This document shows, one piece after another, positions 15,501-60,601 of a stretch of 64,000 nucleotides of DNA (position 1 is the first letter of the stretch; each line of letters begins with the position of its first letter). Source of the stretch: Podarcis pityusensis (taxonomy: Eukaryota); the NCBI GenBank assembly GCA_964106645.2, contig OZ067042.1. One strand, written 5' to 3'. The notes below the pieces were generated by a model. It was not told the DNA's origin, did not search any database, and saw nothing but the letters and a program-made list of their open reading frames with translations. Made by a program: the position numbers and the translations under genes.

Positions 15501-18308
15501 TGATGGGAGTTGTAGTCCCAAAACATCTGGAGGGCCGAGTTTGCCTATGTCTGCTCTAGCTGTTGTTAAGACTTCCAAACTCCCATCAGCCCCAAGCAGA
15601 TGGCCAAAGGTCAGGGATGTTGAAAAATTTAGTCCAACAATATCTGGAGGGCCACAGGTTCCTCATCCTTAAATCTTAAGGACATAAAAAACTAAATTAA
15701 GACGGCCCTATATGAAATAAGTCATTTTATTACATTTTATTATCAACATGTATAATACTATCGCATATAAACTGGACAAAAATACATTTGTGCAGTCAAA
15801 AGTGAAATTGTAAGTTAAAACTTCTGTAATACTTTACAGTGTACATTTAATAACTATCAACATATGCCCAGAATATTACAAGATTAATAATATGGGTAGA
15901 AAGTTACGTTTACAGTTTTTAAAACTGAAGCTAATTTAATTTTTTACCTAATAAATAATCAGTCTAGCAAGTAGTCACAAACATTCATACATCAAATTGA
16001 CACTCATGAATGCAAGAATGTTTACTGACCTTCTCCCGAACTTTGTACATCTGTGGCAATCTATTGTTGATTTGATTAGTAGCTTCTAAATTTAGTATCT
16101 GTTTTTGCATAGAGGCTGTAAGAGATTCAGGAAATATTTGCAGCTTTCCAGACTGTGCAAACTGTGAAACATAAAAAGGAAACAAAAGTATAAAGAAAAC
16201 ATAAAAACATAACAAAATATAAAAAGTAGAAGCACGTTTGTATTATTTGTATTGCAGCAACACCTAGAGGCTCCATTAAGAAGCAAGAATCCCACTCTAC
16301 TTTCACTTAACAAACCAAATATCAAATGCAAAATAAAATATAATTCCAATTTTCAAAGCTTGGGTAGGTAATTTAAATATATGAATGAAAGCAATAGAAC
16401 GCACATAAATTTCATAATAAATAGCAAGCCTATTCAATTGGTAGGGCTGCAATTCTGGTCCACTCTAGTGGAAGAGTGACCTTAAGTAGGAACAGGGTTT
16501 TTCAATGTTATTGCAGTGTTCACATGTTTCAGGAGAGAGCCAGACAGTGATGTCATAAACCTGCTCTGCATATTATTAACCGCTTCAGGATGAACTGAAG
16601 AATCGATACTAGAGCTGTGAACACTTCCTTGTACTGTCACTTCAGTTTAGAACTTCAAAATATTTTCCCAAAGGGTAGCCATGTTAATAACTTGCAGCAA
16701 CAACAAAAATCAAAGACTCTTATGGCACCTTAAAGACTAATGGATTTATTATGGCAGACGTCATGGACTATAGCACACTTCAGATGCTGTTATGCTTCTG
16801 CCCGTTATATGACTGCCAGCAGTGACGAAGGTAATGAGGTGTTTTCTCGGCAAACGGGGTGGGGGTGGGAGAGCAGCATACTAACTGGGCAGTAAAATTT
16901 TGGAGAAGACAAATATTTAGACAAGTAAACCTGAGTGTTAGCGGGGGAAGAGAAATAATGGAAATACACCCAAAGGGGGGGATTGCTTTGTGTGTGTTGT
17001 TGTTATTAGGGGAAAGGGTGCACCTTTGATAAGATTATTGTAGAAAATACAGCTGTAGAAACCAGTCTAAGAAATCCTTGACTTTCATGATGACAACAAA
17101 TCCAAAGCAACCGCCAACACTTGATTTCTTACAGGATTTGTCCACACTTCCATTTATCCTGTACTGTTATTACCTGTCCCTTATTTAAAGGAATGGTTCC
17201 TTATATTGGTGAAGCTAAGGCTGGACTGTGGGGCCCCAAAGTCTAGGGCCCCACAGCCCAGAGGGCTCTGAATGACAATCCAGAGAATGCAGAGTGATGA
17301 AGATAATGGCAAACAGGCCCCACATCAACCCCTGGATGAGCATGTGGGTATGAGGGGGGCACAGCAAAGCCGATACTCATAGCTGCAGGTGGCGCCCCAT
17401 CCAGTCAGAGGTAGCCAGTTATATACATGGTTACATATTCTCATTTCATTGCAGTGGTACCTCGGGTTACATACGCTTCAGGTTACAGACTCTGCTACCC
17501 CAAAAATAGTGCTTCAGGTTAAGAACTTTGCTTCAGGATGAGAACACAAATCATGCTCCCGCAGTGCGGCGGCAGCGGGAGGCCCCATTAGCTAAAGTGG
17601 TGCTTCAGGTTAAGAACAGTTTCAGGTTAAGAATGGACCTCTGGAACGAATTAAGTACTTAACTCGAGGTACCACTGTACTTTTACTTTAACATTATAGT
17701 ATCCCTTTCTGCAACAAAAGGATGCTTGTTTCCAAGAAAGTGTGTTTAGCATCAGAGAAAAAGAATTTATATACTGCCCTATACCCAGAAGTCTCAGGGC
17801 TGTTCAAAAAACTGTCAGCCAAGCTGGTGCTACAATTTTAAGCGAGTTCAGAATGCAAAACTGCACAAGTTCATAGCATCATTGGGGGTTTTTTAGATCA
17901 GGGTCTGCACATGACTTTTGCTCTAACTTAACAGGAATGTAGAAGTCCGTGGATTGGCGTATTTATTTGAAAATAAATGTTGTGTGCTTAAATTTCACAC
18001 CTTTAAGTAATACACATGGCCTTATAAAACCACCACACACCCCGCTCCCCAAGACCGTTATAGGTGAAGGTCTAAGTACTTAGCTGCACTACTCCATCCT
18101 TGTTTCGTAGTGGAATTTAGCACTAAGACGAAATAAGCAACAGGCTGCAACCTGAGACGTTGGGCTATGCCTTTCTCTCCCTTCCCTTCCCACACAAACA
18201 CCCGCCGCCGACCAGCAGAGCTGCTCAGAGGCTCCTTCTCTAAGGGCTTCGCCTTACCCAGGCGCCATCCCGCGCGGTGCTGGGGTTGGCCCGCCTCCCC
18301 TTGGGCAT
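6172..18308 (-). CDS. TEX36: Testis-expressed protein 36, complete 4-exon CDS (18258-18308, 16030-16161, 8188-8265, 6172-6507; 597 nt, 198 aa)
   Basis: Spliced translation MPKGRRANPSTARDGAW/FAQSGK...YKVREK/KPVNTFPFSIHDNRH...YLDS/GLGLRK...RFPK resembles remembered TEX36 (MTKGRR..., YKVREK, FPFSVHDNRH, DSGLG). All introns GT-AG phase 0; synteny with EDRF1. Confidence 0.92.
6831..6950. mobile_element. Old palindromic MITE
   Basis: Inverted termini gggtggaattcaa / ttgaactccaccc with internal inverted segments (agagtaaac / gtttactct). Confidence 0.55.
7240..7900 (+). mobile_element. Degraded L2 LINE 3' fragment (boundaries approximate)
   Basis: aataaactgaagctgaat (NKLKLN-like) and other segments resemble the L2 copy at 30250-31200. 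Confidence 0.55.
8188..8265 (-). CDS. TEX36: TEX36 exon 3
   Basis: tttttag|KPVNTFPFSIHDNRHCLLNVGEYLDS|gtaagt; 78 nt. Confidence 0.92.
13218..13643. mobile_element. Non-autonomous hAT-type DNA element with CpG-rich interior
   Basis: Perfect 8-bp TSD ctctgtac (13210-13217, 13644-13651); TIRs cagtggcatagcgtgg / ccacgctacgccgctg. Confidence 0.85.
15388..15670. mobile_element. Older hAT-type palindromic MITE interrupted by a younger related MITE
   Basis: Termini cagggatgg...cctgtggccctc and ggagggccacaggttcctcatcct; insertion at 15418-15553. Confidence 0.75.
15418..15553. mobile_element. Young palindromic hAT-type MITE (136 bp), nested
   Basis: About 58-bp inverted arms with one mismatch; 8-bp TSD ctctagcg/ctctagct. 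Confidence 0.88.
16030..16161 (-). CDS. TEX36: TEX36 exon 2
   Basis: tttcacag|FAQSGKLQIFPESLTASMQKQILNLEATNQINNRLPQMYKVREK|gtcagt; 132 nt. Confidence 0.92.
16668..16790. mobile_element. Probable Penelope-like retroelement terminal fragment
   Basis: gggtagccatgtta...ggcaccttaaagactaa...cttcagatgc resembles a common squamate Penelope-like terminal repeat (from memory). Confidence 0.5.
17452..17677. mobile_element. Tc1/mariner (Tigger/pogo-like) MITE
   Basis: TIR cagtggtacctcg / cgaggtaccactg; TA target on the right; same family as 40918 and 42318, in opposite orientation. Confidence 0.88.
18258..18308 (-). CDS. TEX36: TEX36 exon 1 coding part
   Basis: gccATG-PKGRRANPSTARDGAW|gtaagg; 51 nt. 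Confidence 0.9.
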
Positions 18309-30200: not shown

Positions 30201-33200
30201 ATTCCCTGCTCCTGTTGTTTTGTATTCTTTCCATGTATTTCCCCCAAATATTTATTATTATTATTTATTCAATTTATATACCACTCTTTATCCAGAGATC
30301 CCAGGTTGGTGTACAACATTAAAAACATAATTTACACATCTTCAAAATAAAGACATAATACATGACATAATAATACACAGTATAATTTAAAAAATACTCA
30401 TAATAGCATTACTCCAGATTTAACAGGCCATAGATTATTTAATGGCCAAAGGCCTGGGTAAAGAGGAATGTTTTTGCCTGGCTCCTAAAGACATGTAATG
30501 ATGGCACCAGGCAAGCCTCTATGGAGAGAGCATTCCACAGACGAGGAGCCCCCACAGAAAAGGCCTGTTCTTGCATTATCAACCTCGAGATCTGTCATGG
30601 AGCAGGCACATGAAGAAGGGCTTCAGATGATGATTGCAGGGTCCGAGTCAGTTCATATGAGGCAGTCCAGCACTTTGAATTGGGCCCGGAAACTGATGGG
30701 CAGCCAGTGCAGTCAGGCCAGGAATGGTGTTAATATGCTCAAACCATCTTGCCCTGACTGCCCAATTCTGCACCAGCTGAAGTTTCCAAACCATCTTCAG
30801 AGGCAGCTCCATATAGAACACATTGCAAATAATGTAACCTAGAGGTTACCAGAGCATAGGCAACAAAAGTTAGGCTATCCCTGTCCAGATAGGGGTGTAG
30901 CTGGGCCACCAGCCAAAGCTGACAGAAGGCACTCTGTGCCAAGGCCACCTGGGCCCCAAGTGACAGCAATGGATCCAGGAGCACTCCCAAGCTATGTATC
31001 TGCTCCTTAAGAAGGAGCATAACCCCATCAAGAACAGGCAGTCTCCCATCTATCCAGTCTAGGGAACCACCCAGTAACAGTGCCTCTACCTTATTTGGAT
31101 TAAACCTCAGTTTATTGGCTCTCATCCAGTTCATTACTGAGGCAAGACACCAGTCCAGGACATCAGCTGTCACACCTGTAGTTCTTAAAGGAGAAATAGA
31201 GCTGTGTGCCACATAGGGTGTGTGTGTGTAAACATGTAATCACAGTTCTTTCTTCCGCACAATTGGACTGTGGTGGCTTATGCTTTTCTCACTTCTGGCC
31301 TCTATACCTCACCTGGAGACTACTCTTTCTCCCTACAGGTGATTCCCTAACTTACTGGTTCTTAAAGTGTTGCCTTAGAAATGCTTCTCATAAACTTTTT
31401 TTATTCACAGTCTCAACCTTTTAACACAGTGCTGTAGCCAATACCAGAAAGTAAAAAAGCAGTTCTTGTTTAAAAACCATGTGTTTTGTGCTTTTCTCAG
31501 CCTTTGTATGTACCCTACTGACTAAAATGTATTACAGATACTCTATGAATTTTGAACCTAACTGAAGGGGAACAAAGTTTCTATTTGTAGATTTTAATGA
31601 GTCTGATTCATTTTACTGAAATAACACTACATATATTTCTGTTTGTAGGGATAACAATAAACCAATTAATGTGCTAACTGGCATTGACTATTGGCTGGAC
31701 AATTTGATCTGCAATGTGCCAGAACTTGTGATGTGTTTCCATGTTAATGGAATTGTTCAGGTAAGCTTTAAGTTCTGTTGCTCTGATTACTGTATTTGTT
31801 CTTGGTCAGTAAAATATGATTGCACAATTGTTAAGCCACAGTTTTCAAGCAGGTTTTTTTCACTTAGATGACAACCGGTTTAGGGCATTGGTGTATTGAA
31901 AAGGAATATTTTGTTGATACTACTTCATAAGCACATTCAGACTTGGCAAGAGATTTTAGTGGGCACATTAATAATGAAATTCTTAAACCACAACAAAAAT
32001 ACGAAAGGTGCATTGGGTTAGTGTGTATGACTGTTAACCAGAAGGTTGGTGGTTCAAACCCACCCAGACAAGGTTGTGGGCCAGATTCCTGCATTGCAGG
32101 GGGCTGGATTAGATGACCCTCAGGGGAATGTTCCAACTCTACAGTTTTCTGATTCTAAGAATGCATGGAAGGCAATTACTTCCTTGTAGCATAAACAATA
32201 CTTCTAATTGGTTGTTTTGTTTATTTTAGAAATACGAAATGATTAAGACAGAGGATATACCCAACTTGGAAAACTCAAATTTCTCTACCAAAGTAATAAA
32301 AGATATTGCTCAAAATATTTTATCATTTCTGAAAGCTAACTGTACCAAAGAAGGGCATACTTACTGGCTGTTTAAAGGTGAGCATTTTTCCATTTTTCTT
32401 TAAAGGTAACTTGCAGAATTACCATGATTTAGGGTAGGGAAGATTCCTAGGTTCATAGACAATTGCACAATATATGGTGCCAGTATTTTTGCCTCTTTCC
32501 TGAGGGTCTCTGCTGGGCATCTGGCAATGTAGATTGTGCCCTGTCTCTCCCTTCTTTCTTTACTTCCTCCCTCCCCATAGCATGTGGTGGCAGCATGTTG
32601 TGTGCTCCTGGGGTGCTCTAGGGTGCTCCTGCCACAGACCCATGCTCTGTTAGACTAGGGGCAGCAACCTGGGCTGCTCTGGTAGCTCAGGAAAAGAGCA
32701 ACGTCTTATTACATGCACAATGTACCAACAGACAGGAACAGAATTTTGCTCCCTCTTGTTTTTTGTGCTTCCTTCATTCCTACTTTTGTGATGCTAGGAG
32801 GGAGGGGCTTGGAAGCGGAGCAAGGATTAGGGAGTCTAAACTGAGATCACTCTAGCCATTCTGTCTCGTCTTGTTCTTTCCTTGTTTGATCATACTGGAG
32901 TGTGACCAAAAATTCCAGTTTTTCCTTATTTTATTGTAGGACCCATACTTTTTCAAGCATACACTTATGGAAAAAATATTTTTCTTTCAGCAAGTGGAAG
33001 TGATATCGTAAAGCTGTATGACCTGACCACTCTCTGTGAAGAGACAGAAGATAAATACCAAAACCCCTTCACGATGCCAGTGGCAATTCTTCTTTACAAG
33101 TAAGTTTGCTTTGTATGGTTAGTACTATAAACACAGGAAAAGGTCTGAATGATACTGTTCAGCTTGAGGATTACAACCCAAATCTATGCAATCTGTAGAA

Positions 33201-46810: not shown

Positions 46811-49743
46811 AATATACAACAACAGCATGATCACTAGCACAATTTTCAACAGGGTCACACCCGTTTTTTCCTGGCAAAGCTTGTCATGCAGGGCAACCAA
46901 GCCAGTTTTAGTGCAGAACTCATGTCTAAACCCTGATTGAAATAGAGCCGGACAATTAAGTCTCATCCAAAAGTAGCCACAGAGAATACTGCTCAAAGGA
47001 TGGGTTTTGCCTGCATGCTATAATTATCCTTTATTAACTGACATTTTATCATCTTCAGTCTCCTTCAGTGGGTATGATGTCATAGTCCTGCCTTTTTATA
47101 AATACAAATGAGTTTTTAGATCTTACTCTATTTTAGATTTATGTTTGTTTATGCTTACTTCTTGTAAAAAAAGAACTAATTAAAGTTCAATAAGTAATGA
47201 TAAATGATGCTGTTGTATAGTACCCCTATATATCAACAAGAGCAAGGGCCACTGTAGTAATATTACGGCTGCCAGGGACTGCTGCTCCCTGGGACTATGG
47301 TTGGATCTGAGTGTATGGTCACCACTTGCGGTTATGTGTCAGACGCGGGTGGCATTGTGGTCTAAACCACTGAGCCTCTTGGGCTTGCTGATTGGAAGGT
47401 CAGTGGTTCGAATCCATGCAACGGGGTGAGCTCCTGTTGTGCAGTCCCAGCTCCTGCCAACCTAGCAGTTCGAAAGCATGCCAGTGCGTAAATAAATACC
47501 GCTCTGGTGGGAAGGTAAACAGCGTTTCCATGCGCTGCTCTGGTTTCAGTGTTCCATTGTGCCAGAGGCAGCTTAGTCATGCTGGCCACATGACCCGGAA
47601 AAACTGTCTGCAGACAAACGCCGCCTCGGCCTGAAAGTAAGATGAAGCGCTGCAACCCCAGAGTCGCCTTTGAGAGGACTTAACCGTCCAGGGGTCCTTT
47701 ACCTTTTACCTATGTGTCGGTGCTGGGATATTACCAGCTAGTAATACTGTGGCCTCGTAAGCTTGAGTTGTTAGGCATTTTGTAGGGGAATCAGCTTAAT
47801 ATTGAATGTGGTGATCCAGTTCACACATGCACACAATTACTCGGGAGTTACTGATTTGCAGCTGAATGTATGAACAGACACTGTTTAAAGCATAATTCTA
47901 AAGTGCTGTGTGTGATTGTGTGCTCCTCCACAGTTGAATCACGAAGTCACGATGTGATCATTACAGCATGTTTTTAGTCAGTTGATAAAAGAGAGGCATC
48001 CCTAATAGAAAAGAGGACACAAAGGGAAGTAGAACAGAATTGCTATAAAGGACAAAGCACATTGGTATATATAGTCACTGTGCCATGTTGAATGTGTGCT
48101 CAGAAAGTTAAATTGGCTTAGAGAGCTAAGGTCACTTTCAACTCCATTGTGAGGCTTCTAATGGACCCTTTGAGTTAATAATTCTGTAGTGAAAGATCAG
48201 GGGTGTAAAGAGGTAAGCCTCGTCAGACATTTGATTGTGTTTTCTCCCTTGCTGCTAAATGTTTGGAACACCTGAAGCTTTTAACTATGAGAATGTAACT
48301 GCAGACAAATTGGGGTGGGGGGGAGAGTGGTATCTCCAGAATGGGGTGTTTAGCTAGGAGGCTTAGATATTGAGAACTACTAACCAGCTTTATGTATCAT
48401 TTGGAATGCATATGCATCATCAGTGGAATATCAATGCATAAACCATCTATAATAGAGCAATGCATGGATAAAATAGCTGCTCTCTCAATTATAAAATAAC
48501 TTTGCTGTTTGGCAATGAAACAGTTTTAAAACACTTATTAAAATAAATACTTAGTTCTGGATATTCTAATAGAATTCATTGGAATTTTAAATTTACTAAC
48601 TGGTTTGTCTGCATAATAAATAAAGCTGTCAATTCTATTTGCCAAATGTTAGGAATTTAATTGCTTCTTGCTTTCTTGGATCAAAGTATTTCCAGTGGCA
48701 ATGCTTTCTCTGTATAGTTCTAGATAATGCCAGCTGTGGCAGTTGTTCATTTTTGAGCACATTTTATTAGTGTCTAAAAAGAGATGGAGAACTTGCACTA
48801 ACAAAAGCAAAAGATCTAAGCTTATTCAACACACCTGAGTTCCTCTGACAATTAGCATTGTGATGAAGCATGATGAAAGAGAAAGGTTTTTCTAAAAAGT
48901 ATTAATGTAGAGGTACACAGAGGCTGGTGCATACAATGAGCTATTGTGGTGAACCCAAGTAGTTGAAAAATAAGTTGCCATTAAAGGAGAATGTAATAAA
49001 TGGAAAGATTCAACCGTGACAAAAGTGAGATTCCATTAGTACTCAGAAAGTGTAAGTGTTGCACACTTTTGAGTTGCACTGATGAGAACATGAAAAACAG
49101 GATAAATGGTATTTGCTCCAGGTGGAAGGAGGATGAATTGTGGTCCTGCTGTCTCCCAAGGGTTACTGCTCAGCTAAATTCCCCTCTATTTGCTCACAGT
49201 ACAGGATCTTCCCTTGCACTTAAACCTATTTTCCTATGATAGAGGTAAGGGAAAGAATATGCTAATAGGCCCCTTGTGTCCGCATGATTAAGGAGGATGT
49301 GGTAGTGGTAAAAGTCTAAGTGGATAGGTTTTGATCCAACATACTGCAAGCAGAGTTCTGCCACCCCAAAGAAAGCTGCTCCTAGGGTAAAGGATGTGTC
49401 ACAAGAGGCTTCATTTGGCAGGGCGAATATGTGTAAATCAGGGGATCTTCTCTTTGCACAAATAAACGTGCATCTCACACACATTATTGCTCTGTTGGAG
49501 CCAAGCCATTATCTGCAGACTTTGTTTATGCATCAAGTACTAGATTAACCTAGTTCCCCCCTTTCTTCCAGAGGTAACAGTGAAGAAGAAGAAATTCTTA
49601 AGACCAATAAGAATGTTTATTCACTTCTCTTGCGATCAGCAGCAAATAAAAACCTGACTCTGCTAGAAAGAACGGAAGTTGTTTTAAACTTATTGGAAAA
49701 GCTGACTCAGGATAATGAAGGCAATAATCTGGGAATTCAGTGA
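19803..49743 (+). CDS. EDRF1: Erythroid differentiation regulatory factor 1, complete 25-exon CDS (3738 nt, 1245 aa)
   Basis: All 25 exons splice in frame (24 introns, one GC-AG). Peptides such as KTDLKLPPANWLRESAKLGPAG, LLKIPYSKSHVSMAVHRIG, GIDYWLDNLICNVPEL match remembered EDRF1; synteny with TEX36 and UROS. Confidence 0.96.
20585..20739. mobile_element. hAT-type MITE
   Basis: TIR catagctgtcaac / gttgacagctatg; perfect 8-bp TSD cactatgt. Confidence 0.88.
21420..21667. mobile_element. hAT (Charlie-like) MITE
   Basis: Termini catgggtaggcaaac / gtttgctgacccctg; perfect 8-bp TSD atctaaac. Confidence 0.85.
21848..22056 (+). CDS. EDRF1: EDRF1 exon 2
   Basis: ag|GSVLFLGGNEVKSSAVVKY...KGKPFS|gt; 209 nt. 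Confidence 0.95.
22709..22775 (+). CDS. EDRF1: EDRF1 exon 3
   Basis: FGMAYDFIDSIGNDVDVVSDSE; 67 nt, AG/GT. Confidence 0.95.
24242..24290. repeat. (TG)n(GA)n compound microsatellite
   Basis: Directly visible. Confidence 0.95.
24385..24611. mobile_element. Tc1/mariner (Tigger-like) MITE, second family
   Basis: TA-cagtggtacctt ... aaggtaccactg-TA. Confidence 0.85.
24745..24870 (+). CDS. EDRF1: EDRF1 exon 4
   Basis: NIKKLLKIPYSKSHVSMAVHRIG...MRSSQ; 126 nt. Confidence 0.95.
25307..25431 (+). CDS. EDRF1: EDRF1 exon 5
   Basis: TGDWTWLKEFYQRLIDQKWQRKKKSKEHWYQKAILSKFLYY; 125 nt. Confidence 0.95.
26005..26300 (+). mobile_element. Degraded CR1 LINE reverse-transcriptase fragment
   Basis: Reads NDLELGLSSEMAKFAADATLFR, similar to the CR1 ...SEVAKFADDTKLFR motif. 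Confidence 0.7.
27041..27197 (+). CDS. EDRF1: EDRF1 exon 6
   Basis: INGDGAAQPVPPE...WPAPFEMPSSLSEDASASNQ; 157 nt. Confidence 0.93.
27672..27695. repeat. (GCT)n trinucleotide repeat
   Basis: Directly visible, intronic. Confidence 0.9.
29145..29246 (+). CDS. EDRF1: EDRF1 exon 7 (phase 0-0, cassette-type)
   Basis: GSVPHEPSYVVGDVSSVPKEQNLSTLFSDGGNSQ; 102 nt. Confidence 0.88.
29523..29644 (+). CDS. EDRF1: EDRF1 exon 8
   Basis: GLKNDFVRNILWTFEDIHMLVGSNMPIFGGGRYPAVSLRL; 122 nt. Confidence 0.95.
30250..31200 (-). mobile_element. L2-clade LINE 3' fragment
   Basis: ORF 30739-31212 reads WMRANKLRFNPNK...LGVLLD...VTSRL, typical of the L2 RT C-terminus; (TAA)n-like tail near 30250. Confidence 0.85.
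31649..31760 (+). CDS. EDRF1: EDRF1 exon 9
   Basis: DNNKPINVLTGIDYWLDNLICNVPELVMCFHVNGIVQ; 112 nt. Confidence 0.95.
32010..32158 (+). mobile_element. tRNA-derived SINE with CR1-type 3' tail (lacertid POM/P.s.1-like)
   Basis: B-box-like ggttcaaacc, then gggctggattagatgacc...ttccaactctac...gattcta CR1-like tail. Confidence 0.7.
32230..32377 (+). CDS. EDRF1: EDRF1 exon 10
   Basis: KYEMIKTEDIPNLENSNF...KEGHTYWLFK; 148 nt. Confidence 0.95.
32991..33099 (+). CDS. EDRF1: EDRF1 exon 11
   Basis: SGSDIVKLYDLTTLCEETEDKYQNPFTMPVAILLY; 109 nt. Confidence 0.95.
34069..34180 (+). CDS. EDRF1: EDRF1 exon 12
   Basis: VACNMMLKKNQNRKHYGTIRTLLLNCVKLLDKGRHPQ; 112 nt. Confidence 0.95.
35000..35260 (+). CDS. EDRF1: EDRF1 exon 13
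   Basis: IIASANYMLSELFQLDEP...acidic tract...KYKSTHQIR; 261 nt. Confidence 0.95.
35809..35880 (+). CDS. EDRF1: EDRF1 exon 14
   Basis: PSCAFPVCHDTEERCRLVLNYVLE; 72 nt. Confidence 0.95.
35980..36130 (+). CDS. EDRF1: EDRF1 exon 15
   Basis: GLKSVDSSIKKESDLPAADPSTPIPLKYEDE...LFLDK; 151 nt. Confidence 0.95.
36293..36481 (+). CDS. EDRF1: EDRF1 exon 16
   Basis: GSFREVKHSSQSGMIPGSWQYKMKLQL...LALQCH; 189 nt. Confidence 0.95.
37018..37202. mobile_element. hAT-type MITE
   Basis: Termini ctggggtagtcaac / gttgacaacccctg; TSD ctctagcc/ttctagcc. Confidence 0.8.
37488..37688 (+). CDS. EDRF1: EDRF1 exon 17
   Basis: TYCCLCTNMLSEVLLFLCQSLTLCGDIQLMLAQN...RESSCQ; 201 nt. Confidence 0.95.
38848..39066 (+). CDS. 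EDRF1: EDRF1 exon 18 (ends at a GC donor)
   Basis: FSWATDLSTDLECQL...RMGNIRNEIGVFYMNQAAALQSERG G|gcaagt; 219 nt. Confidence 0.92.
39095..39125. repeat. (CA)n microsatellite
   Basis: Directly visible. Confidence 0.95.
39404..39444. repeat. (CTC)n microsatellite
   Basis: Directly visible. Confidence 0.95.
40497..40720 (+). CDS. EDRF1: EDRF1 exon 19
   Basis: NKTVSAAEQQLWKKSFSCFEKG...NAALLLCNMGRLMR...YYNK; 224 nt. Confidence 0.95.
40918..41159. mobile_element. Tc1/mariner (Tigger-like) MITE
   Basis: TA-cagtggtacctc ... gaggtaccactg-TA. Confidence 0.9.
42038..42196 (+). CDS. EDRF1: EDRF1 exon 20
   Basis: AVDYYLKALRSLGEREVHPAVWDSVNWELSTTYFTMATLLQDYAPLSRKAQEQ; 159 nt. Confidence 0.95.
42204..42246. 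repeat. (TG)n microsatellite just after the exon 20 donor
   Basis: Directly visible. Confidence 0.95.
42318..42532. mobile_element. Tc1/mariner (Tigger-like) MITE
   Basis: TA-cagtggtacctcggg ... aaggtaccactg; same orientation as the 40918 copy. Confidence 0.88.
42757..43275 (-). mobile_element. RTE-clade LINE, 5'-truncated
   Basis: ORF 42758-43213 reads QLHWTDHAVRMPD...KQLL...G.QQKKFKD, as in RTE C-termini; flanked by tgtacaaatgtta / tgtataaatgtta (12/13 TSD). Confidence 0.85.
43417..43566 (+). CDS. EDRF1: EDRF1 exon 21
   Basis: IEKEVSESMMKSLKYCD...QYRAATVHHRLASMYHSCLRNQ; 150 nt. Confidence 0.95.
44119..44272 (+). CDS. EDRF1: EDRF1 exon 22
   Basis: VGDEHQRKQHRVLVDLHYSKA...ELLRVQLERVAFAEFQMA; 154 nt. 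Confidence 0.95.
44477..44592 (+). CDS. EDRF1: EDRF1 exon 23
   Basis: QNSSAGKLKTLSGALDIM...AEFEQ; 116 nt. Confidence 0.93.
44904..45070 (+). CDS. EDRF1: EDRF1 exon 24
   Basis: RLEDNKS...LLGIFESRLSFLLLQSIKLLTSTKRKV; 167 nt. Confidence 0.93.
46744..46810. repeat. (CT)n(CA)n compound microsatellite
   Basis: Directly visible; sits within an apparent decayed LINE fragment. Confidence 0.95.
47341..47710 (+). mobile_element. Full-length Sauria-type SINE
   Basis: tRNA-like head with A-box-like tggcattgtggtc and B-box ggttcgaatcc; ACCTTT tail; TSD tatgtgtc at 47333-47340 and 47711-47718. Confidence 0.9.
49572..49743 (+). CDS. EDRF1: EDRF1 exon 25 (terminal coding exon)
   Basis: GNSEEEEILKTNKNVYSLLLRS...GIQ-TGA; phase fits exon 24. 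Confidence 0.92.
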
Positions 49744-50197: not shown

Positions 50198-50499
50198 TGT
50201 TACAGCAAAAGTCCCCTTTGCTGTTTCTTTCCACTATGCATTCTCTGCTAAGCAAAACGTCCGTGAAAGGCACATGCCAGCAGTATTAATTAAAACCATA
50301 ACATTACAATTACAGATTCCTCCAAAAATGTGCCTTTTGCACTTCAATGCAAACACTTAAAATAGACATTACTCTGAAAAATGAAATGGGCTTGTTTGTA
50401 CCTCACTGTCACTTTTTCAGAAATGTGAATAAACAGTTGTATATTGAAGAAATTTTATTAAAAATTTATCCCAGTGGTCAGCATTTCATTTCTGTTGTC

Positions 50500-53400
50500 T
50501 CATTTTCCTCCCAGAAAACCTCAAAGGTATCAGTGCATACAAAGGTTGCTGTGTTGGTTCTTTTGTTTGTTCTTTTGTAGAGGTTTGTAACACCATCAGG
50601 GAACACAAGTTTCTTTTAAAAAGGAATATTGTTCCTGCATTGCACAATAATCTCATTCCGCAAATGGCTACCATTTTGCCTAACCAAATATTCCAAGTAA
50701 CTTGAAAGATTGCTCATTCTTGCTTTTCCACAGAATCACTTTCTGTTGCCTGCTGTGTCTTCTCTTGTGTATGACCGACAGGCTATATTATCTTGTATTA
50801 TTTATTAGGCGTCATATGCAATGTTCAAAATTGTGACCCTATGGTGTCTTTGCATGTTCTAATTCGGCTCAGATACTCACTGCATGATATGACTGAGCTA
50901 CCAACCAATAGTTCTCTCATCTTATTCTGAGTCATTTTGACTCATTGGCTTGGATCCTAACTTTTTTTTTTTTTTTTTTAATATATATTTATTCAAGTTT
51001 TTCAATACATAAACATATTTAAACAAATAACATTAATTATTTGACATCTTTTCATCATTGCTTTGGACTCCCCCACGCCTCCCGCACACACCTGCATCGT
51101 TAAAGAATTGTTTCCAAACAAATTATCATTTTGTTCGTAATCTTGAATTTGATCATTAACATATAGTTTAAACTTAAATCTTATTTAGTGGTAGACAATT
51201 ACTTCTACTCTGACATCCTAATCAACATTCGGCCAAATTACAATACTTTTGCAGATAAATCTTGAACTTCTTCCAGTCTTCTTCCATCCTCTCTTCTCCC
51301 AAGTCTCGAATTCTGCCGGTCATCTCGGCTAGTTGCATATAGTCCATCAGCTGCATCTGCCATTCTTCCAACGTAGGTAGATTTTGAGTTTTCCAGTTCT
51401 TAGCAATCAGTATCCTTGCTGCTGTTGTTGCGTACATGAAAAATGTTCTGTCCTTCTTTAACACACTCTGGCCGACAATGCCCAAGAGGAAGGCCTCCGG
51501 TTTCTTGGTAAAGGTGTACCTAAACACCTTTTTTAACTCATTATATATCATCTCCCAAAAGGCCTTCACTCTCGGGCAAGTCCACCAGAGGTGAAAAAAG
51601 GTTCCTTCATTTTCCTTACATTTCCAACATTTATTATCAGACGAATGGTATATTTTGGCCAATTTAACTGGGGTCATGTACCATCTATATATCATTTTCA
51701 TTACATTTTCCTTCAAAGCATTACATGCAGTGAAGTTCAGCCCAGAGGTCCATAACCTTTCCCAGTCTTCAAACATAATATTATGCCCAATATCCTGTGC
51801 CCATTTTATCATAACCGATTTGACCATTTCGTCTTGTGTGTTCCATTTCAGCAACAAATTATACATCTTTGAAAGTACTTTAGTCTTAGGTTCTAACAGT
51901 TCAGTTTCCAGCTTTGACTTCTCCACCTGGAATCCTAACTTTTTGTCATTTTTAAATACTTCTTTAATCTGAGCGTAGTGTAACCAGTCCCGCACTTTAT
52001 CTTTCATTTTCTCTAAACTCTGCAATCTCCAATTGTTACCATCTCTTTCTAATATCTCCCAATATTTTGGCCAGTTGGCCTCCATATTGGCTCTTTTTCG
52101 GGCCTTAGCCTCTAGGGGTGACAGCCACCTCGGAGTTTTATTCTCCAATAAGTCTTTGTATCTTATCCAGACATTAAATACTGCTTTCCTGACAATATGG
52201 TTCTTAAAGGCCTTGTTTGTCTTAACCTTGTCATACCATAAATATGCATGCCATCCAAATGCATTATTAAAACCTTCTAAATCTAATACATCCGTATCTT
52301 CAAGAAGTAGCCAATCTTTTAGCCAGCAGAAAGCTGCCGCTTCGTAATACAGCTTTAGGTCTGGCAGGGCAAAGCCCCCTCTTTCTTTTGCATCCGTTAA
52401 TATCTTAAACTTAATTCTGGGCTTTTTGCCCTGGCTTGGATCCTAACTTTTATTTTGCTCTTGGGGTTTGGGGAACCCTTGAGCGGTGTGGAGAGCTGCA
52501 GGCAGCCAAGGGAACATGGTTTCTTCTATAAAGGCTACACTATGTTGGTTATTAGCAACCTGATTCTGTAAGAATTTTCTACATAGTAGCTATATAGATA
52601 TTTCAGTGAATTATATTTTTTAAATTTGCAGCTCCAAAAAGATGTATAGTCCTTATCTGGACCACCTGGAGTGCATTTTAAGTATCACTTCCTTTGGCAG
52701 TTTGATACGGAGTTGTTTCCAGCTGCAGAGAACATTTTGTGCAATGGGACATTTCTCTTCCTTTCTTTTGTCCCCCATATACCCATGGGATATGCTGTGG
52801 GCTAAATTGTCTGGGCCTGCAGTGGGAGGGCATAATTGTCCCAAAGCAGGTAGGGAAATCTTGCACAAGATTCTTCTGCCCAATACCTGGTGATTCACCT
52901 CCACCCTGTTCTGGATAACACAGCCCACAATGTTTGGTAGGTCCTGCTGAGTATCTAGAGAGACTTTTTGTGGGGGGTGGGGGTGGGAAAAGGAAAGGGA
53001 GATCATATGAGCTACCTTAACTTGTGCTTGTGCAATGTTCAATACATCTCATGAGCACAAGAACTTTGCTACAGGTAAGCTTGGAGAACACTTGTGGATT
53101 TTCCTCTAATAGTTGGAATTTACCTTTTTTGAAAAGATGTTAAATGAAAGGCCACTTCATAAGTAGTACCAATAGATTGTATTACCACCAATGTAAATAA
53201 TGTGAGATAACCAGCTTCGGATAACCAATATGCTTAAGTCTAATTAATGCATGAAGGGGTTAAAACCAGAGTAAGCTCTCCTGCCATGCTTCTTGAAACT
53301 TGGGAGGGACTAGCTTATCAAGCCTTTGTTCCATCACTCTACCCAAGATGCTCAGGATGTAAAGCAATCCAAGCTGGTTGTTCCAAGCTCAGATTTCATG

Positions 53401-56011
53401 GCTCTAACTTTCTTGAGTTCATATATCAATAATTTAGGAACTTTCACCAATGTAACTAAACCAAGTTTTACTGTCTGCAACCTTTTCTGACTGCTGTATG
53501 GAAAAGCACACGAACCTGACCCATGGGGAGTTTGTAAGTAAACCATTTTTAACTTAACCAAATGTGTGTCTTTTCTATGCTAAGGGAAGAGGGAAGTTTT
53601 GAAACTCACAAGGATATATTTTAAAGGTCTAGCAGCCTGTATTTCCACACTTTAATATTCTGCATATGTGGCGATTTTAAAACCTCTGCTGGGGTTTTTG
53701 CCCCAAACCTGGATGTTAGCATTCAGGAATTCTCTTTCCTATACGCCTATTTTATTTTTTGCCGCCAACAAATAAAAGTACTTTACAATTCTGTTGGTGG
53801 CGTCTTGCCTACATTATCATCTTAATGAGAGTGATATTTTTGATATTCAGCATTTTATGTCAAGCAGAGTAATAGTGATTGTTTATATGTATGAAATATC
53901 TTCCAACTATTATAGATAACTTTATTATTTTGGCTATTGTCTAGAAAGAGATTCTGCTGGAGTTTTTAGAGTGAATTAAGCAACTGCCACATAGCTACTG
54001 GATGTTTTGTTGCATGCTGACATTTTCCTTTTATGAGGAAGCCAACTGTTTGGTTTAACTTGTGCTATCTACATAACAACCATCGCCTATATCCTTTTGT
54101 GCTTCACCTATTTAAAGGTTAAAGAGAACCAAAGTAAACCTACATACCGTATTAACCATTTCCAGTCAGCTGGATCCAGGTGGTGTTTAGAGTAACAATG
54201 GCATATATAACTTGTTCAAGAAGCCATTTTAACTTGCAAAAGATGCTGATAAATATTGTAGCTCATTTTTTCCCAGGCCTTATATTTGACCAGTTTGCAG
54301 GGAATCTGTCTTGCAAAACACTTTACCCCCCACTCTGAATGTAGTACTTTAAAAGTTTGCATTGCTTCCCAATAGTAGTGTTTAGAAAAGTTGAGTGAAG
54401 GCAAAACTGTCCAGAACAGAGATAGGTTTTCCAAATGCTAGGCAAACAGCTTGCTGTAAAACTGAGTTTCTTGCTAAGGGGGAAATTGGCAGGTCTGCAT
54501 CTCTTCTTTCCTACTCCCTACTGTAGATTTAAGGCTGCAGCTTATTGCTTTGGGGCTCCCATGTGAAGAGGAGCTAAGGGTTTGTTGACATTAGATTTTT
54601 TTTTATATAAAAAAAATCAAACACTTTAACAATTGGGCAGATAACAGGGATTGAATTCATTCTACCTAGCCTGACTCTAGCAGTCTGGATCATAGAGTTA
54701 TGCTGACCACTGACTGCAAAACAGTTGAATTGCTTTAGTGCCTATAAACTCTGTCCCTTATGTTTTATAAGCAGCAATTCTCTCCCCTCTAGTCTCAGTT
54801 AATGCACTTTGGCATCAGAGAGAAATTACACAGCAGGAACTGTCATTACCCAAGCCAGAGTACTAAATAACCGGTGTAATGTACCTTTTCTTTTGCTCTG
54901 TACTGGGGTAGTCAGGCATCATGCCTTCTGTCTAAGCAAATTAGGAGGTGATACTGATGTGTAGGCTTGATGCTCTTCTATGGCCTCATTCTGTGTTGTA
55001 AGACAGCATTTGTTTCTCCTTTATATTCTAAGCATTATTTATTAAGAGCCATTATGTGAGTTAGCCTAAATGAATCAGTGCATTTTCTTTTAACTTTTCT
55101 TTCTGTTAGATGAGCCCTGTTAGATCTCTTTTAATTAGTAATGATGGCTCTACATTTTGCTATCCAGCATATAGGCAACAATCCCAGAGGCATAATAAAA
55201 TCCACAATATTCAAGTACACAGATTATCTAGTACTGTTGCCTTTGGTAGAGAGCTGATCATGTTAGACAGGACAAGGTTTTAGAATGCTGTAGCAGCCTT
55301 CTACTAATAACATTTCACCATAAACCACAGACAAAATGTTGTAGTTCCAACACAGAACTGAACAGTAAATGGCTGCAAAGTAGATGGAGGCCCCTTTCCC
55401 TTTCTTCAGGCATCTGAAGTGGCTTTGAAAGGGACATCCATGCTTTCATTCTTTTCCGTCTACATGAATATGTTAGTAAGGCAGTAAATGGAGTAGTTTG
55501 TTACAACTCCCTTCCCCAGTGGTGGTGCAGCAGTTGTCCCAAGTTCTCCCTGTGATTTATGAAAACAAAAATACCCTACTTGCATCAGACCAGAGGTCCA
55601 CCTGTACTTTGCACAGTACAGTTTACAAACATGGCTTAGAGTTGATAATCCTCTCTTGCTATATTATCCTACATCTGTGGCAAATTTGGAGGCAATTTTG
55701 TGCAAAACATTATTCCACAGTGGTGGCTGATGCTCATTGGGATTGCTAGGGAAGAATGGAGGCAGGTGAAGCCAAAGCCGACTAATTCTAGTCTTGTCTC
55801 CATCTTCTGTTCTGAATTCCACAATAGCAACATGAGAATCAAGAGGAGGGGACAGTCACCGCCGTCCAGTGGACTGCTTGTTATGGAGGAAGGCAGACAG
55901 GTTGGTATGGCAGTGCGCCATTTGCCCCAGTGAACAAGATTCCACTGCTATTCTGTATCGCCATCATGACCAAGAACCAGCGAGAGATATTGTCCATGAT
56001 TCTGAACTGGT
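50500..56011 (-). pseudogene. MMP21: Putative highly decayed unitary MMP21 pseudogene (scattered exon relics)
   Basis: Sits in the MMP21 syntenic slot on the expected strand. Collinear fragments: CGI (55811-55823), WRLIGEGY-like (55645-55673), QTGQI*GL vs EIGHVLGL (54274-54297) with LDPADWK..G|gtatgt (54148), WY.YE-like (53156-53171), TIFLFKRN vs SIFFFKGN (about 50610). Manual comparison only. Confidence 0.55.
50962..52431 (-). mobile_element. Young 5'-truncated L1-clade LINE (ORF2 C-terminus, 3'UTR, poly(A))
   Basis: Frame open 52430->51222 (GKKPRIK...GGFALPDLKLYY...CWKCKENEGTFFHLWWTC); poly(A) as T-run 50962-50979; 16-bp TSD tggcttggatcctaac at 50946-50961 and 52432-52447. Confidence 0.93.
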
Positions 56012-57650
56012 CTAAGTACAACAGAAAATAAAATGGAGAGAGAAATGCAAAGCTTACAGGGAGTGTTTCCCTGCTACCTGTCTTAACATTTTGACAGGTC
56101 ACACAGTAGGACTTTGTAGGTTGATCTGAATGCCTGGCAGTCTCATAGGGGTGTAGTTGGTCCTTCAGATAACATGATCTCAGAACTTTGAGGGCTTTAA
56201 AAGTTCAAAACTGAAACTTTAAATGGACCTGGAAATGAAACTGGCAAAAAGTACAGAATTGGCTCCCACAAGCATTATTGCTGCTGCATTCTGTACCAAT
56301 GGAATTTTCTTAACTGAAAGGAGAGCATTATTCTAATTCATTGTGGATGTAACCAGTGCATGAGTCACTATGGCAAGGTCACATTTCACCAGATAGATTC
56401 CAGCCAAACTCAAGCTGTGGCCCCTATTGCAAAATCAATTTAACTAGGTGACCAGTTCTGGCATTGCAAGTGAGGAAAGGAAAAACCTCTACTAACTACT
56501 TTTACAGCAGTAGAACCTCTGAAGACTACTGTTCTTGGCAATCTTGAGATCACTTTAGGAAATTAATGTTTTTAACAATTCTAGACTTTTGAATTGATGT
56601 TTTTAAATTGTGGAAGTGTTTGCCACCCTGGCCTTCTTCAATAAAACATACAAACGGTCTGAATTCACAAGGTTAGGTGCCTATGTTTTTCAAGGTATAA
56701 CCAGAACATCAAGAATATTTTGTAACTTGTTTATTGGAATTGTGACTTGGAAATCATTCTTTCCCTCTTTCAAAGGATGATGCAAAACATGATTTAAACA
56801 GGAGCACACAATGTGCTTGTATAAACTGAGATACTTGATATACAGAACACTTGTCAGAAGCGACTAATTTGAAATGAACATATTCACAGCCTATGATCAA
56901 ATATCTCATTTATATGCTATTATTCACAGTAGCAGAGAACGTACAATTACGAAAATCTGCATAAGGTGTAAAGTACATAGGAGGCAACCAATATCCCACC
57001 CCAAGTGTATGGTGGAGTGTCTCTGGAAGTCTGCTTTTAGTCAATGGGCAGATTTCATGTAAAGTGTCCAATCAGCACGAGGGTTTTCACTCATGCAATT
57101 GAGCTTTCTCTTTTTTCTTCCCTCTGCTTCCCATCTGAAATTGGCTCAGGGGCGTTAGAAGAATTCCCAGAACAGCACATAGGGGATTAGTCTGTCTGGC
57201 AGGTTGCAATGCTTGCACTGACCATAACCCGACATTGAAATCTACCCTGGATTTCTGAAGGGAACTTAGGTGCAATGAAAATTGCATCTGGATTATAGCA
57301 ACATTGCTTACATTAAATGTGAGACTTAATTAGAAGGCAACAGAACACCTAATGCTTCATTATTACTATTTCTAAAACTTTTTTTAAAAAAGCTCACATT
57401 TATCAGGGTAAGATTAGACAAGCTGTTAACTGTGCTAGACAGCTACTATTACTGTCCATTTTAATTTGTATTTAGCACCACTGTTAATACAGTATAAAGG
57501 CATACATTAAGTGTCTTACAGGCCAGAGCTGAATATGACTTCTAATCCCAATGAATGTTACACCCACTGACAATAAGTTTTCATTTTAGAGATGTCATTT
57601 CTGCGAAATAGCGTAATATCCAATACACACAGCCTTAAAATCCGTCAGTT

Positions 57651-57776
57651 CTACAACTGGAGACTCCTTTTAATGCAAGCAGTGAGATCCTCTGGAGTTG
57701 GGCTACTGGCAATGCAGCTCACTGAGACGCCTTGAGCAGTTATAGCTTCAGCTGTTGTTGGACCTATAGCAGCAAA
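57651..57776 (-). CDS. UROS: UROS terminal coding exon
   Basis: tttcag|[44 protein letters not shown]; 126 nt. Confidence 0.95.
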
Positions 57777-60601
57777 CTGAAATGACACTCGTGTTAACAC
57801 AGTAGAGACCGATACAGTATTGACTTCAGCTCTTGCTATGTCAGCCAGCTGCCTGATAACATTTCCCCATGTAGATCAACACCCTAGCCTTTCAGAAATG
57901 TATTCCAAACTCATGTATGTATGTGGTTTTGGATCAAGGGCTAAAATGCATCCCTTTTCATTGGTCTTCAAGTTGCAATAAAGATCTATTGAACTTATTT
58001 TCTCATACCAATGAAGTTTGGACTAATAAATGTCAACGTACCCTCTTTAACTTACGTCTGGTACCAATAGCCAGCCTTGAAATTACATAGCAAGCAAGTT
58101 CGCACTACTAATTCAAAATTCAAGTAGGGCAGGAAATTAAGCCCCATCTTAATATATGCTGTGTTCATGCTCAAACTATAGAATGGCTTTGCTCACACGT
58201 CATACTACCCATCTTTAATGGTTTAGTGTGAACATGCTGGTCTCTCCTGTTTTGCTCCTCCTTGTTGGACCCACTTGGTTTAGCATTACATCCAGACCAG
58301 ATATCATGGTTTGTCCTGCTCAAAGTGTAAACCATTACTAGATTGGGATTGTGGTGCAGCTGGGCAACTCTTTGCACCCTGCCCCCACTATTTATCCCAG
58401 GGTGAAAGCAGCTATTGATGCCAATAGCGTTTTCAGGATGGTGACTTTCATCAGAACTGCAACATGGGTGGAAAATATTATCTCCCTCCCTCCTTGTGTT
58501 GTGGCCTCAATACAAATCTCCACCCCCACCTGGGTGGTAAAATATAAACACATGTGAATATGCACTCAATGTCACAAGTGGTTGATAATTCATATTCTGC
58601 AAACAGTGAAGTGAAGAAATAAATCAAGTGAAATGGTGTCGGCTTCCAATGGCGTGCATGCCTTTGCTGCTTCTTTTCCCTGCAGTTATTCCATAATGGT
58701 TGTATATCAAACTCTCATTACTGTTTGGTTGCTAACACACTGAAACATCCATAGATTAATGTGATTCTGAGTCAGTAAATAAGTTCTGTATCCCTCGACA
58801 CTATAGGAAAAACATGTCCCCCAATTCATAAAGTGTCTTTCTACAAAGGATATTAAGGCAATTGACAGCGAACAGTTGCCACCCACAGCACAAAGTTAAG
58901 AGACAGAAAAGCTTAAAGCAAAATGATAATCAGGAATCCAAGACCCTTGAATCAGAATTCTGTTTGAACCAAATGCAATATTACCTCTCCAACAGATTTG
59001 TACCTTAATTTGGGGAAAGAGATCACCAGCCAATTCCTGAATCTGCTTCATACAATATTTGACACCAGATGGACTGAAAAACGTGATACTTGCAGGAATA
59101 CCCTGTGGAAAAATATTTAAAAGAGAAGGAGAGCTGATATTTCTTCCTGGTTGAATCTCTTGATGTATGTTCAACCAGGGTTGTTTTTTTGTTTTGTATT
59201 CACCATGGCCACTTTGCAGCTTAAAAGTCGGTTTTGAAGTTGCTGCAGTGGATATTACAGCTAGCGGGGGGCTCTTACCACATGTACATAAAGCAACACA
59301 ACATCACATTTCAGTTGCTGTTTTGCCCAAGAATGCATGAAGTTTGATTTTTCCAGTTTGATTGGGAGGAGGTCACTAGAAGACCAGGCTAATGTTTCCT
59401 GAAAGAAGTCCTTTTTATTCCTGTCTACAAACAATTCCTCATAGTAACATAGTTACTTAAAGTTTTGTAAATGAACCTCACATTTCTAATTGTAATAGGC
59501 AACTGCGTAGCTTGGGTTCTACAGTCAAGATCCCACAGCCAATATAACCTCTCCTTTCTAATGCACTTTTAATCAAACAAAAATCCTTCAAGGGCTCCCT
59601 TCTAAACTTACTCTGGGCTACTGATCCAACACCAACTATATGCTCCACAAATGACCATGCAGAGTCAAGCATTCAGTTGTGTGGAAGACAGCCTGCTGTG
59701 GCATAAAAAAATATACGTGAGCTAGAGAACTAATCTCAACAATGGCATTAGAGTAAGATCTCTCCTAAAAGTATTCAGCATGGAAAAAAACAGCATCCCT
59801 ACAAAATTCCTAATTCCCACTGAGGGGCACGGGCGGAGATGGTGCAAATGAACAACCTGTGTTAACCCTTTACATTCAACAGTGTGAATTCCCTTAGAAC
59901 AATAAATGCTTTACTGCAGAAAGGGAAAAAAAAGATTTTTCTACAAAAAAAAAAGTTTTAGGAAGTACAAGAAGACGACAATAAGATATAACCTCAAGTC
60001 CACCTAATTGGCAGCAGCCCCATTTACTTTAGTGGGACCCTTCTAATTCTAGATCGCTGCCATAACCCCTCAAAAAACCCCCATGAAGCTGGGAACAAAA
60101 CACACAAGTTACCTGGAAGGTAAGATTATTTGAGTTCTTTCTGTGAGAGCATCTAAAATAGGTTGAACATCTCAATTGCAGGAGGAAAAAAGATATATGT
60201 CTATACCATTAGTGTGGTAAGAAATGTTCAAGGATTATATAACATAAAACCATCAATAGGTTTAAGAGCTATTGTGTTTCGTATCACAAAAATGTCTGGG
60301 GACCACTTCCATTTTTATCAAACAAATGCATTATATCTAAGATGACTAAAAGCACAGCCAGAGGAATTCTGCCTCCACAGCTAGGGGAGGGGGCTGGAGA
60401 AATTGCTTAAGCAGCTTGCTGGTTGTCCTTGGCAATAGTAACTTAACAGACAACCAAGAGAACGTAATAAAATTTATCATAATGTAGATAAATGCTCACT
60501 TGAGAAGTGAGATACCTGTTGTGAGAAATAATTCCTCAAGGAGTCTTGAAGATTAAGATGTTGAGTAGTTTGGTAAACAGTAAGGCCCTCTAGTGCAATG
60601 C
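57651..60601 (-). CDS. UROS: Uroporphyrinogen-III synthase, last three coding exons (gene continues beyond the window)
   Basis: [11 protein letters not shown].../[13 protein letters not shown].../FAAIGPTTA...SPTPEDL... match the UROS (HEM4 family) C-terminus; GT-AG introns in frame. Confidence 0.95.
59004..59102 (-). CDS. UROS: UROS penultimate exon
   Basis: ccacag|[33 protein letters not shown]|gtac; 99 nt. Confidence 0.95.
60516..60601 (-). CDS. UROS: UROS third-to-last exon
   Basis: ttgcag|(G)[28 protein letters not shown]|gtatc; 86 nt. Confidence 0.94.

What the first reader, a model, noticed from the sequence alone, without database searches (positions are those of the whole stretch)
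50500..56011. Molecular fossil of MMP21, a left-right organizer gene, between EDRF1 and UROS
Established: in mammals MMP21 lies on the UROS strand between EDRF1 and UROS. It belongs to the gene set tied to a motile-ciliated left-right organizer and is reported absent in birds and reptiles. Seen: no intact metalloprotease ORF here, but at least four minus-strand patches resemble MMP21 exons in the correct 5'->3' order: prodomain/catalytic start (55645-56011), Zn-binding exon (54148-54309), hemopexin (about 53120-53171) and last exon (about 50500-50690). They carry stops and indels. Inference: the gene decayed in place rather than being deleted, and the relic could help date the loss. The comparison used remembered MMP21 sequence and each patch alone is weak.
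Basis: partly seen in the sequence, partly recalled or inferred. Interest (0 to 1): 0.85.

Follow-up and report, generated by a model that had tools for sequence, protein, structure and literature searches.

The report
Decayed MMP21 gene in wall lizard
A left-right patterning gene thought absent from reptiles survives as faint broken remnants around a still-conserved non-coding element, and damage shared with turtles and a crocodilian suggests it died once, early in reptile history.

Summary
Podarcis lizard DNA between EDRF1 and UROS, where MMP21 sits in marsupials and a caecilian. No intact gene is present.

Against 44 intact MMP21 proteins, none of the four patches convincingly beats chance (best p 0.03-0.08). 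Two turtles and a gharial, however, keep clear collinear exon relics. Bridged through them, the lizard holds real MMP21 DNA:
- exon 5 at 54320-54087, above all 1284 null windows;
- the 3' part of exon 6 at 53200-53056;
- the exon-4 region at 55250-55025;
- a 270-bp non-coding element (54959-54690), about 81% identical to turtle, whose core lies in intact marsupial intron 4.

The 'zinc exon' is exon 5. Patch 1 as exon 2 fails all tests, and patch 4 is unresolved.

Turtles and gharial share loss of the catalytic Glu, a Met-turn deletion, a stop and an exon-6 insertion (12 shared changes versus 4.3 expected). The gene therefore died before their split. The insertion probably also occurs in lizards, suggesting one loss on the sauropsid stem.

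Degeneration in reptiles was already noted in 2015 (seen second-hand). I did not find the shared lesions or the retained element in the library. The scan had not noted this on other DNA.

The parts
55025..55250 (-). End of intron 3, relic of MMP21 exon 4 (zinc-binding/Met-turn exon, about 55230-55083) and start of intron 4; broken by stops and frameshifts
   Evidence: Turtle+gharial DNA block aligns end to end, 131/209 identical; full-length score 10.1 bits, above all 1279 null windows; best interval-wide hit of the protein+turtle+gharial model ends at 55087, p 0.003, matching the place projected from the Elgaria and turtle alignments. The exon-only DNA model is not significant alone and one combined model gave only p 0.02, so the exon sequence itself is faint.
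54690..54959 (-). Conserved non-coding element in former MMP21 intron 4 (probable cis-regulatory element)
   Evidence: 89-90% identical to Elgaria and gecko, 81% to painted turtle and gharial, 77% to Emydura; more conserved than the UROS last coding exon (82% vs 74% to turtle); 1- and 2-base indels, so non-coding; core found in intron 4 of the intact devil gene, 18.6 bits vs shuffle maximum 10.6; no Rfam match and no covariation support.
54087..54320 (-).
   Evidence: Near full-length alignment to the turtle/gharial exon-5 relic, 125/220 identical; exon-only model 8.7 bits, above all 1284 null windows; reciprocal best window in both turtles, p 0.003 and 0.002, but not in gharial; exon-4 models score below most shuffles here (83/100).
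53056..53200 (-).
   Evidence: 71% identical to Elgaria; the Podarcis+Elgaria profile has its best window on exon 6 in both turtle (p 0.006) and gharial (p 0.005); anchored test 1/300 shuffles; not detected by unanchored forward scans of Podarcis alone.
53201..53820 (.). High-copy repeat fragments lying directly upstream of the exon-6 relic; they hold the 'YPKL'-like motif
   Evidence: Read-contig depth hundreds of times background, with loose ends at 53201/53221 and 53263/53268.
50462..50786 (-).
   Evidence: Intact-protein model p 0.03-0.08; 0/100 shuffles in one anchored test, but the signal is lost when Elgaria, gecko or gharial are added; it abuts the EDRF1 3'-end element, which lies 1.8 kb from the MMP21 stop in devil.
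55645..56011 (-).
   Evidence: 64% identical to Rhineura, no alignment to Elgaria, gecko, turtle or gharial; exon-2 models no better than shuffles; read depth up to about 3 times background.
50981..52430 (-). Young 5'-truncated LINE (L1-like) insertion with poly(A) tail and target-site duplication, between the exon-6 relic and patch 4
   Evidence: 308-aa open frame; the same stretch of 16 or more bases on both sides; family name is my reading, Pfam gave no match.
56716..57790 (-). UROS last exon and 3' UTR (upstream boundary of the relic)
   Evidence: tblastn of the UROS protein; RNA-type contig ending in a poly(A) tail at 56716.

Best explanation
This is a unitary pseudogene of MMP21 in its ancestral place. 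SHOWN: turtles and gharial keep collinear broken exons; the lizard keeps DNA orthologous to exons 4-6 around an intron-4 element; the gene was already dead before turtles and crocodilians split. INFERRED: it was inactivated once, on the sauropsid stem, when the cilia-driven left-right organizer that uses MMP21 became dispensable. Its exons have since drifted neutrally and been cut by deletions and mobile elements. The middle of the locus was not deleted because intron 4 carries a regulatory element, most likely an enhancer, that stays under strong selection, probably serving a neighbour (UROS, EDRF1, BCCIP or a more distant gene). The exon relics on each side persist as passengers.
For: Synteny. 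Relic scores against intact-protein models: painted turtle e1 33, e3 28, e4 23, e5 85 bits; Emydura e1 30, e3 55, e4 26, e5 82; gharial e3 28, e4 26, e5 53; all in gene order, opposite strand at most 26. A prodomain piece in turtles, 0/300 shuffles. Lizard exon 5, the exon-4 block and the exon-6 region. Intron-4 core in devil. Turtle-gharial shared lesions: catalytic Glu lost, Met-turn MQPN deleted, TAG stop at the same codon, exon-4 donor lost, 4-base deletion in exon 5, insertion of about 60 bases in exon 6; no intact protein of 119 has an insertion there. 12 shared derived changes at 172 invariant sites versus 4.3 expected, P 0.0016. Unconstrained stem branch 0.08 substitutions per site (about 0.03-0.15) versus 0.22-0.23 on each later branch. 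Lizard shares 2 of 4 exon-5 derived states and the intact state at none, has TAA at the shared stop, and aligns inside the exon-6 insertion. No sauropsid among the best 120 MMP21 homologues.
Against: The lizard signal is near the detection limit and depends on the model: an eight-segment chain score with one combined model was not significant (53 of 72 null runs as high), and intact-protein models alone see nothing. Test windows were partly chosen after looking at the data. Lesions shared with the lizard rest on about 55% identity alignments, and two are transitions that can recur. The exon-6 insertion ends in YAG in both turtle and gharial and might be a decayed small intron. The enhancer role and its target are untested. 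The intron-4 element was not found in the 10 kb fetched for Rhineura.
Confidence: 0.62

Rival explanations
1. The relic is real but the gene was lost twice: once on the turtle-archosaur stem and independently in lepidosaurs, after a period of relaxed selection.
For: The Met-turn deletion shared by turtles and gharial appears absent from the lizard alignment. Statistically firm shared lesions exist only for turtle plus gharial. The stem-branch length converts to time only if early rates resembled later ones.
Against: Lizard DNA aligns inside the exon-6 insertion and carries derived exon-5 states. The unconstrained stem is about 0.37 of a later branch, longer than the short interval between the two splits (about 25 of 255 million years, my recollection of standard dates). 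A deletion limited to one clade is also expected after a single earlier loss.
Confidence: 0.2
2. Only the intron-4 element is true MMP21-locus DNA in the lizard; the flanking exon likenesses are chance or repeat-derived, and the exons were deleted or overwritten.
For: Negative direct searches, non-significant chain, patch 1 negative, a repeat inside patch 3's neighbourhood, and z-scores of 4-5 seen in wrong exon-block pairs.
Against: Exon 5 tops 1284 null windows at the expected side and distance from the element and is the reciprocal best in two turtles; the exon-4 block tops 1279 null windows; the patch-3 profile lands on exon 6 in two species. These stretches are single-copy by read depth.
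Confidence: 0.13
3. The locus has been re-used as a transcribed non-coding RNA or UROS read-through exon, and the conserved element acts as RNA.
For: A few low-depth RNA-type contigs lie on the interval, one over the element (depth about 2-8 versus about 70 for UROS).
Against: No splice joints among relic exons, and the runs may contain DNA; no Rfam match; covariation term unfavourable, only 4 of 70 pairs with a compensatory change.
Confidence: 0.05

Closest known systems
MMP21 of mammals, amphibians and fishes (matrixin family M10A; seven coding exons in devil)
   Same: Position and strand between UROS and EDRF1; order and spacing of exon 4, intron-4 element, exon 5, exon 6.
   Different: No open frame, no HEXXHXXGXXH motif, exons 1-3 and 7 not demonstrable in the lizard.
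Reported loss of the five-gene left-right organizer set (MMP21, CIROP, PKD1L1, DAND5, C1orf127) in reptiles, birds and even-toed ungulates
   Same: No functional gene in sauropsids (10.1101/2024.09.03.611012; PMC12344233). Guimier et al. 2015 are cited as calling it 'absent or degenerating' in birds and reptiles (PMC12143041).
   Different: Those sources, as far as I could read them, report absence. Here exon-level relics, lesions shared across turtles and a crocodilian, and a retained intronic element are mapped. The 2015 and 2022 originals were not readable, so they may already show some relics.
Unitary pseudogenes dated by shared lesions (for example enamel genes in birds and turtles; own knowledge)
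   Same: Decay in place, shared stops and indels used to date a trait loss.
   Different: Probably far older (over 255 million years), near the limit of sequence detection, and centred on a conserved non-coding element.

Membership tests
Unitary pseudogene of MMP21 | Lies at the syntenic position and strand of the intact orthologue | tested here: met
   (UROS-MMP21-EDRF1); window map.
Unitary pseudogene of MMP21 | Sequence homology to MMP21 exons above chance, by direct comparison with intact proteins | tested here: not met
   no lizard patch convincingly beats null (best p 0.03-0.08). Met in turtles and gharial.
Unitary pseudogene of MMP21 | Sequence homology to MMP21 exons above chance, bridged through slower-evolving relics | tested here: met
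   Exon 5, exon-4 block and exon-6 region; intron-4 core in intact devil gene.
Unitary pseudogene of MMP21 | Exon relics collinear, with intron sequence kept (not a retrocopy) | tested here: met
   Order exon 4, intron-4 element, exon 5, exon 6 on the minus strand. The full eight-segment chain was not significant.
Unitary pseudogene of MMP21 | Disabling stops and frameshifts | tested here: met
   Stops in all or most frames and frame-breaking indels in exons 4 and 5.
Unitary pseudogene of MMP21 | No intact copy elsewhere in the genome | tested here: inconclusive
   No sauropsid among the best 120 of 276 homologues; this genome could not be searched as a whole.
Functional matrixin (M10A) gene | Open frame with cysteine switch, HEXXHXXGXXH and Met-turn | tested here: not met
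Conserved non-coding element / enhancer | Non-coding conservation far above flanks across deep lineages | tested here: met
Conserved non-coding element / enhancer | Regulatory activity and a target gene | not testable with these tools
   Needs chromatin data or a reporter assay.
Structured non-coding RNA | Rfam match or covarying structure | tested here: not met

The most novel reading that the evidence does not exclude
MMP21 was inactivated a single time on the sauropsid stem soon after the split from mammals, recorded by an exon-6 insertion and an exon-4 stop shared by lizards, turtles and crocodilians. This would give a molecular date for the loss of the motile-cilia left-right organizer. 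An intron-4 enhancer became more constrained in sauropsids after its host gene died and keeps the fossil in place.
Probability: 0.5. Interest if true: 0.68.

Novelty: new member of a known kind. Interest (0 to 1): 0.5.

Why it matters
Reptiles and birds set left and right without motile cilia, and gene absence alone cannot say whether that happened once or several times, or when. Shared lesions can. The data already place MMP21's death before the turtle-archosaur split and point, less firmly, to the sauropsid stem. The same bridging method (intact proteins, then turtle and crocodilian relics, then lizards) can be applied to CIROP, PKD1L1, DAND5 and C1orf127 to test whether the set was lost together. 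The retained intron-4 element is a candidate regulatory sequence inside a gene linked to human heterotaxy.

Tried and rejected
Searches that found nothing in the lizard:
- Pfam on ten stop-free pieces of the patches: nothing metalloprotease-like.
- tblastn word size 2 and hmmsearch on six frames: noise.
- Codon profile from intact proteins alone: noise in Podarcis, Rhineura, Elgaria and gecko.

Assignments rejected or left open:
- Patch 2 as the zinc exon: rejected. It lies downstream of the intron-4 element and exon-4 models score below shuffles.
- Patch 1 as exon 2, including an appealing whole-exon alignment of the right length: rejected; 86/100 and 77/100 shuffles score as high.
- Exon 1 candidates at 56479-56414 (p about 0.1) and 55552-55329 (p 0.33): unresolved. 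Exon 3 was not found in the lizard.
- Gharial exon-6 hit at 49345-49392: replaced by 48744-48900 after turtle alignment. Gharial exon 7 is tentative (p about 0.1).
- RNA-structure reading of the element: rejected.

Technical limits:
- Two scripts timed out and one failed on an N in a fetched locus; windows with N were then skipped, not filled.
- Coelacanth and mole-rat look-ups had no record; possum and caecilian gave no DNA.
- Tuatara and birds were not examined.
- No human sequence was fetched or typed. Spliced models were searched exon by exon, by reference; the joined step was left out.
Full report
Setting. A UROS exon of the window matches Podarcis lilfordi UROS at 100%, so this is a wall lizard. 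EDRF1 runs on the plus strand to a stop at 49741-49743, and the last UROS exon lies on the minus strand at 57779-57654, with the UROS poly(A) site at 56716. In possum, Tasmanian devil and a caecilian, MMP21 lies between these two genes on the UROS strand, and in koala it follows UROS. The interval has no metalloprotease frame; its one long ORF is a LINE fragment. Contigs from two other runs hold the relic region at about 99% identity.

Getting real MMP21 sequence. I fetched the koala locus through UROS, searched with its exon 1 by reference, and recovered about 120 MMP21 proteins from mammals, amphibians and fishes, none sauropsid. A profile was built from 44 non-primate proteins. The devil gene gave the seven-exon structure. 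No human sequence was used. Spliced models were searched exon by exon and the joined step was left out.

Pfam, tblastn with word size 2 and hmmsearch show nothing. A frameshift-tolerant codon model gives the four assignments p = 0.29-0.59, 0.26-0.66, 0.70-0.84 and 0.03-0.08 against 772 null windows, while turtle controls reach 0.003 or better. Taken alone, the patches are not evidence.

Slower lineages keep the gene visible. Downstream of UROS, painted turtle, Emydura and gharial carry collinear relics. Exon 5 scores 85, 82 and 53 bits and exon 3 scores 28, 55 and 28; exon 1 scores 33 and 30 in the turtles; the opposite strand never exceeds 26. Turtles keep a short prodomain piece (0/300 shuffles), while most of exon 2 is gone. 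Exon 6 is present in painted turtle and gharial.

An anchor in the lizard. Window 54959-54690 is 81% identical to turtle and gharial and 89-90% to Elgaria and gecko, more than the last UROS coding exon (82% vs 74%). In turtles and gharial it starts about 150 bases after exon 4. Its core is the best hit in the whole 25.7-kb devil locus and lies in intron 4 (18.6 bits vs a shuffle maximum of 10.6). It has 1- and 2-base indels, no Rfam match and no covariation. It is therefore MMP21 intron DNA kept under selection, most simply as a cis-regulatory element (inference).

Bridged exons. Models built only from turtle and gharial DNA align end to end at 55250-55025 (intron 3 end, exon 4, intron 4 start; 10.1 bits, above all 1279 null windows) and at 54320-54087 (exon 5; exon-only 8.7 bits, above all 1284). 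The exon-5 stretch is the reciprocal best window in both turtles, though not in gharial. A Podarcis+Elgaria profile of 53200-53056 peaks on exon 6 in both turtle and gharial (p 0.006 and 0.005). The 'YPKL'-like motif beside patch 3 is inside a high-copy repeat. Patch 1 aligns only to Rhineura and fails as exon 2 in every test. Patch 4 is borderline and sits against the EDRF1 3'-end element, which is 1.8 kb from the MMP21 stop in devil.

Limits of the lizard signal. Exon 4 without flanks is not significant. One combined eight-segment chain was not significant. Some windows were chosen after inspection. I put the lizard relic of exons 4-6 at about 0.85.

Dating. Turtles and gharial share loss of the catalytic Glu (invariant in 44 of 44 intact proteins), deletion of the Met-turn MQPN, a TAG at the same codon, loss of the exon-4 donor, a 4-base deletion in exon 5 and an insertion of about 60 bases in exon 6. 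No intact protein of 119 has an insertion there. At 172 invariant sites they share 12 derived bases against 4.3 expected (P 0.0016). A likelihood fit gives an unconstrained stem of 0.08 substitutions per site (about 0.03-0.15), stable when sites near gaps are dropped, against 0.22-0.23 for each later branch. With dates from my own knowledge (amniote split about 318, lepidosaur split about 280, turtle-archosaur split about 255 million years ago) and similar rates, this reaches back past the lepidosaur split. Direct lizard evidence agrees but is weak: two of four exon-5 derived states and no intact state, TAA at the shared stop, and alignment inside the exon-6 insertion. The lizard appears to retain the Met-turn stretch, so that deletion is later. 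The insertion could be a decayed small intron, which I could not exclude.

Mechanism. Shown: neutral decay in place, loss before turtles and crocodilians split, and strong selection on an intron-4 element. Inferred: a single loss on the sauropsid stem tied to the switch away from a motile-cilia organizer, and survival of exons 4-6 as passengers of an enhancer serving a neighbouring gene. Low-depth RNA-type contigs show no splicing of the relic and may be read-through or DNA.

What is known. Absence of MMP21 in reptiles is reported (10.1101/2024.09.03.611012; PMC12344233; 10.1101/2024.10.13.618030 for the cilia context), and a 2015 paper is cited as saying 'absent or degenerating' (PMC12143041). 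The originals were not held. Library searches showed no description of shared lesions or of the element, which does not prove novelty. Verdict: a real but faint unitary pseudogene, a new member of a known kind, whose value is that it makes the timing of organizer loss testable. Interest 0.5.

Noticed in passing
window 54690-54959 (-); L001 47688-47957; L003 45779-46034; L007 13255-13310: The intron-4 element is strongly conserved across sauropsids but only a short core survives in the devil gene, so constraint may have risen after the host gene died. It was not found in the 10 kb fetched for Rhineura.
   Followed up: partly
window 50981-52430 (-): 5'-truncated L1-like insertion with an unbroken 308-aa frame, poly(A) tail and exact target-site duplication; looks young and may be polymorphic among Podarcis.
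   Followed up: no
window 6175-16242 (-): Three exons hit Pfam HDNR (PF15115): the TEX36-like gene expected upstream of EDRF1 (gene name from my own knowledge).
   Followed up: partly
L005 about 31060-31190: In Elgaria a stretch that looks like a retroelement 3' end appears to be inserted into the exon-4 relic (read from the alignment).
   Followed up: no
L008 34860-34920; L001 45677-45734: In both turtles a prodomain piece of exon 2 sits only about 200 bases after exon 1, once a lineage-specific insertion in painted turtle is set aside. This implies large old deletions on both sides; gharial seems to lack exons 1-2. Could include the first inactivating lesion.
   Followed up: partly
window about 50420-50460; L007 17519-17566: EDRF1 3'-end element with a poly(A) signal on the plus strand, conserved between lizards and devil.
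   Followed up: partly
window 56716-57650 (-): UROS 3' UTR of about 930 bases, with blocks conserved among squamates.
   Followed up: no
window 56146-56247 and 30669-31211: Fragments of an old LINE family shared with Rhineura, Elgaria and gecko loci.
   Followed up: partly
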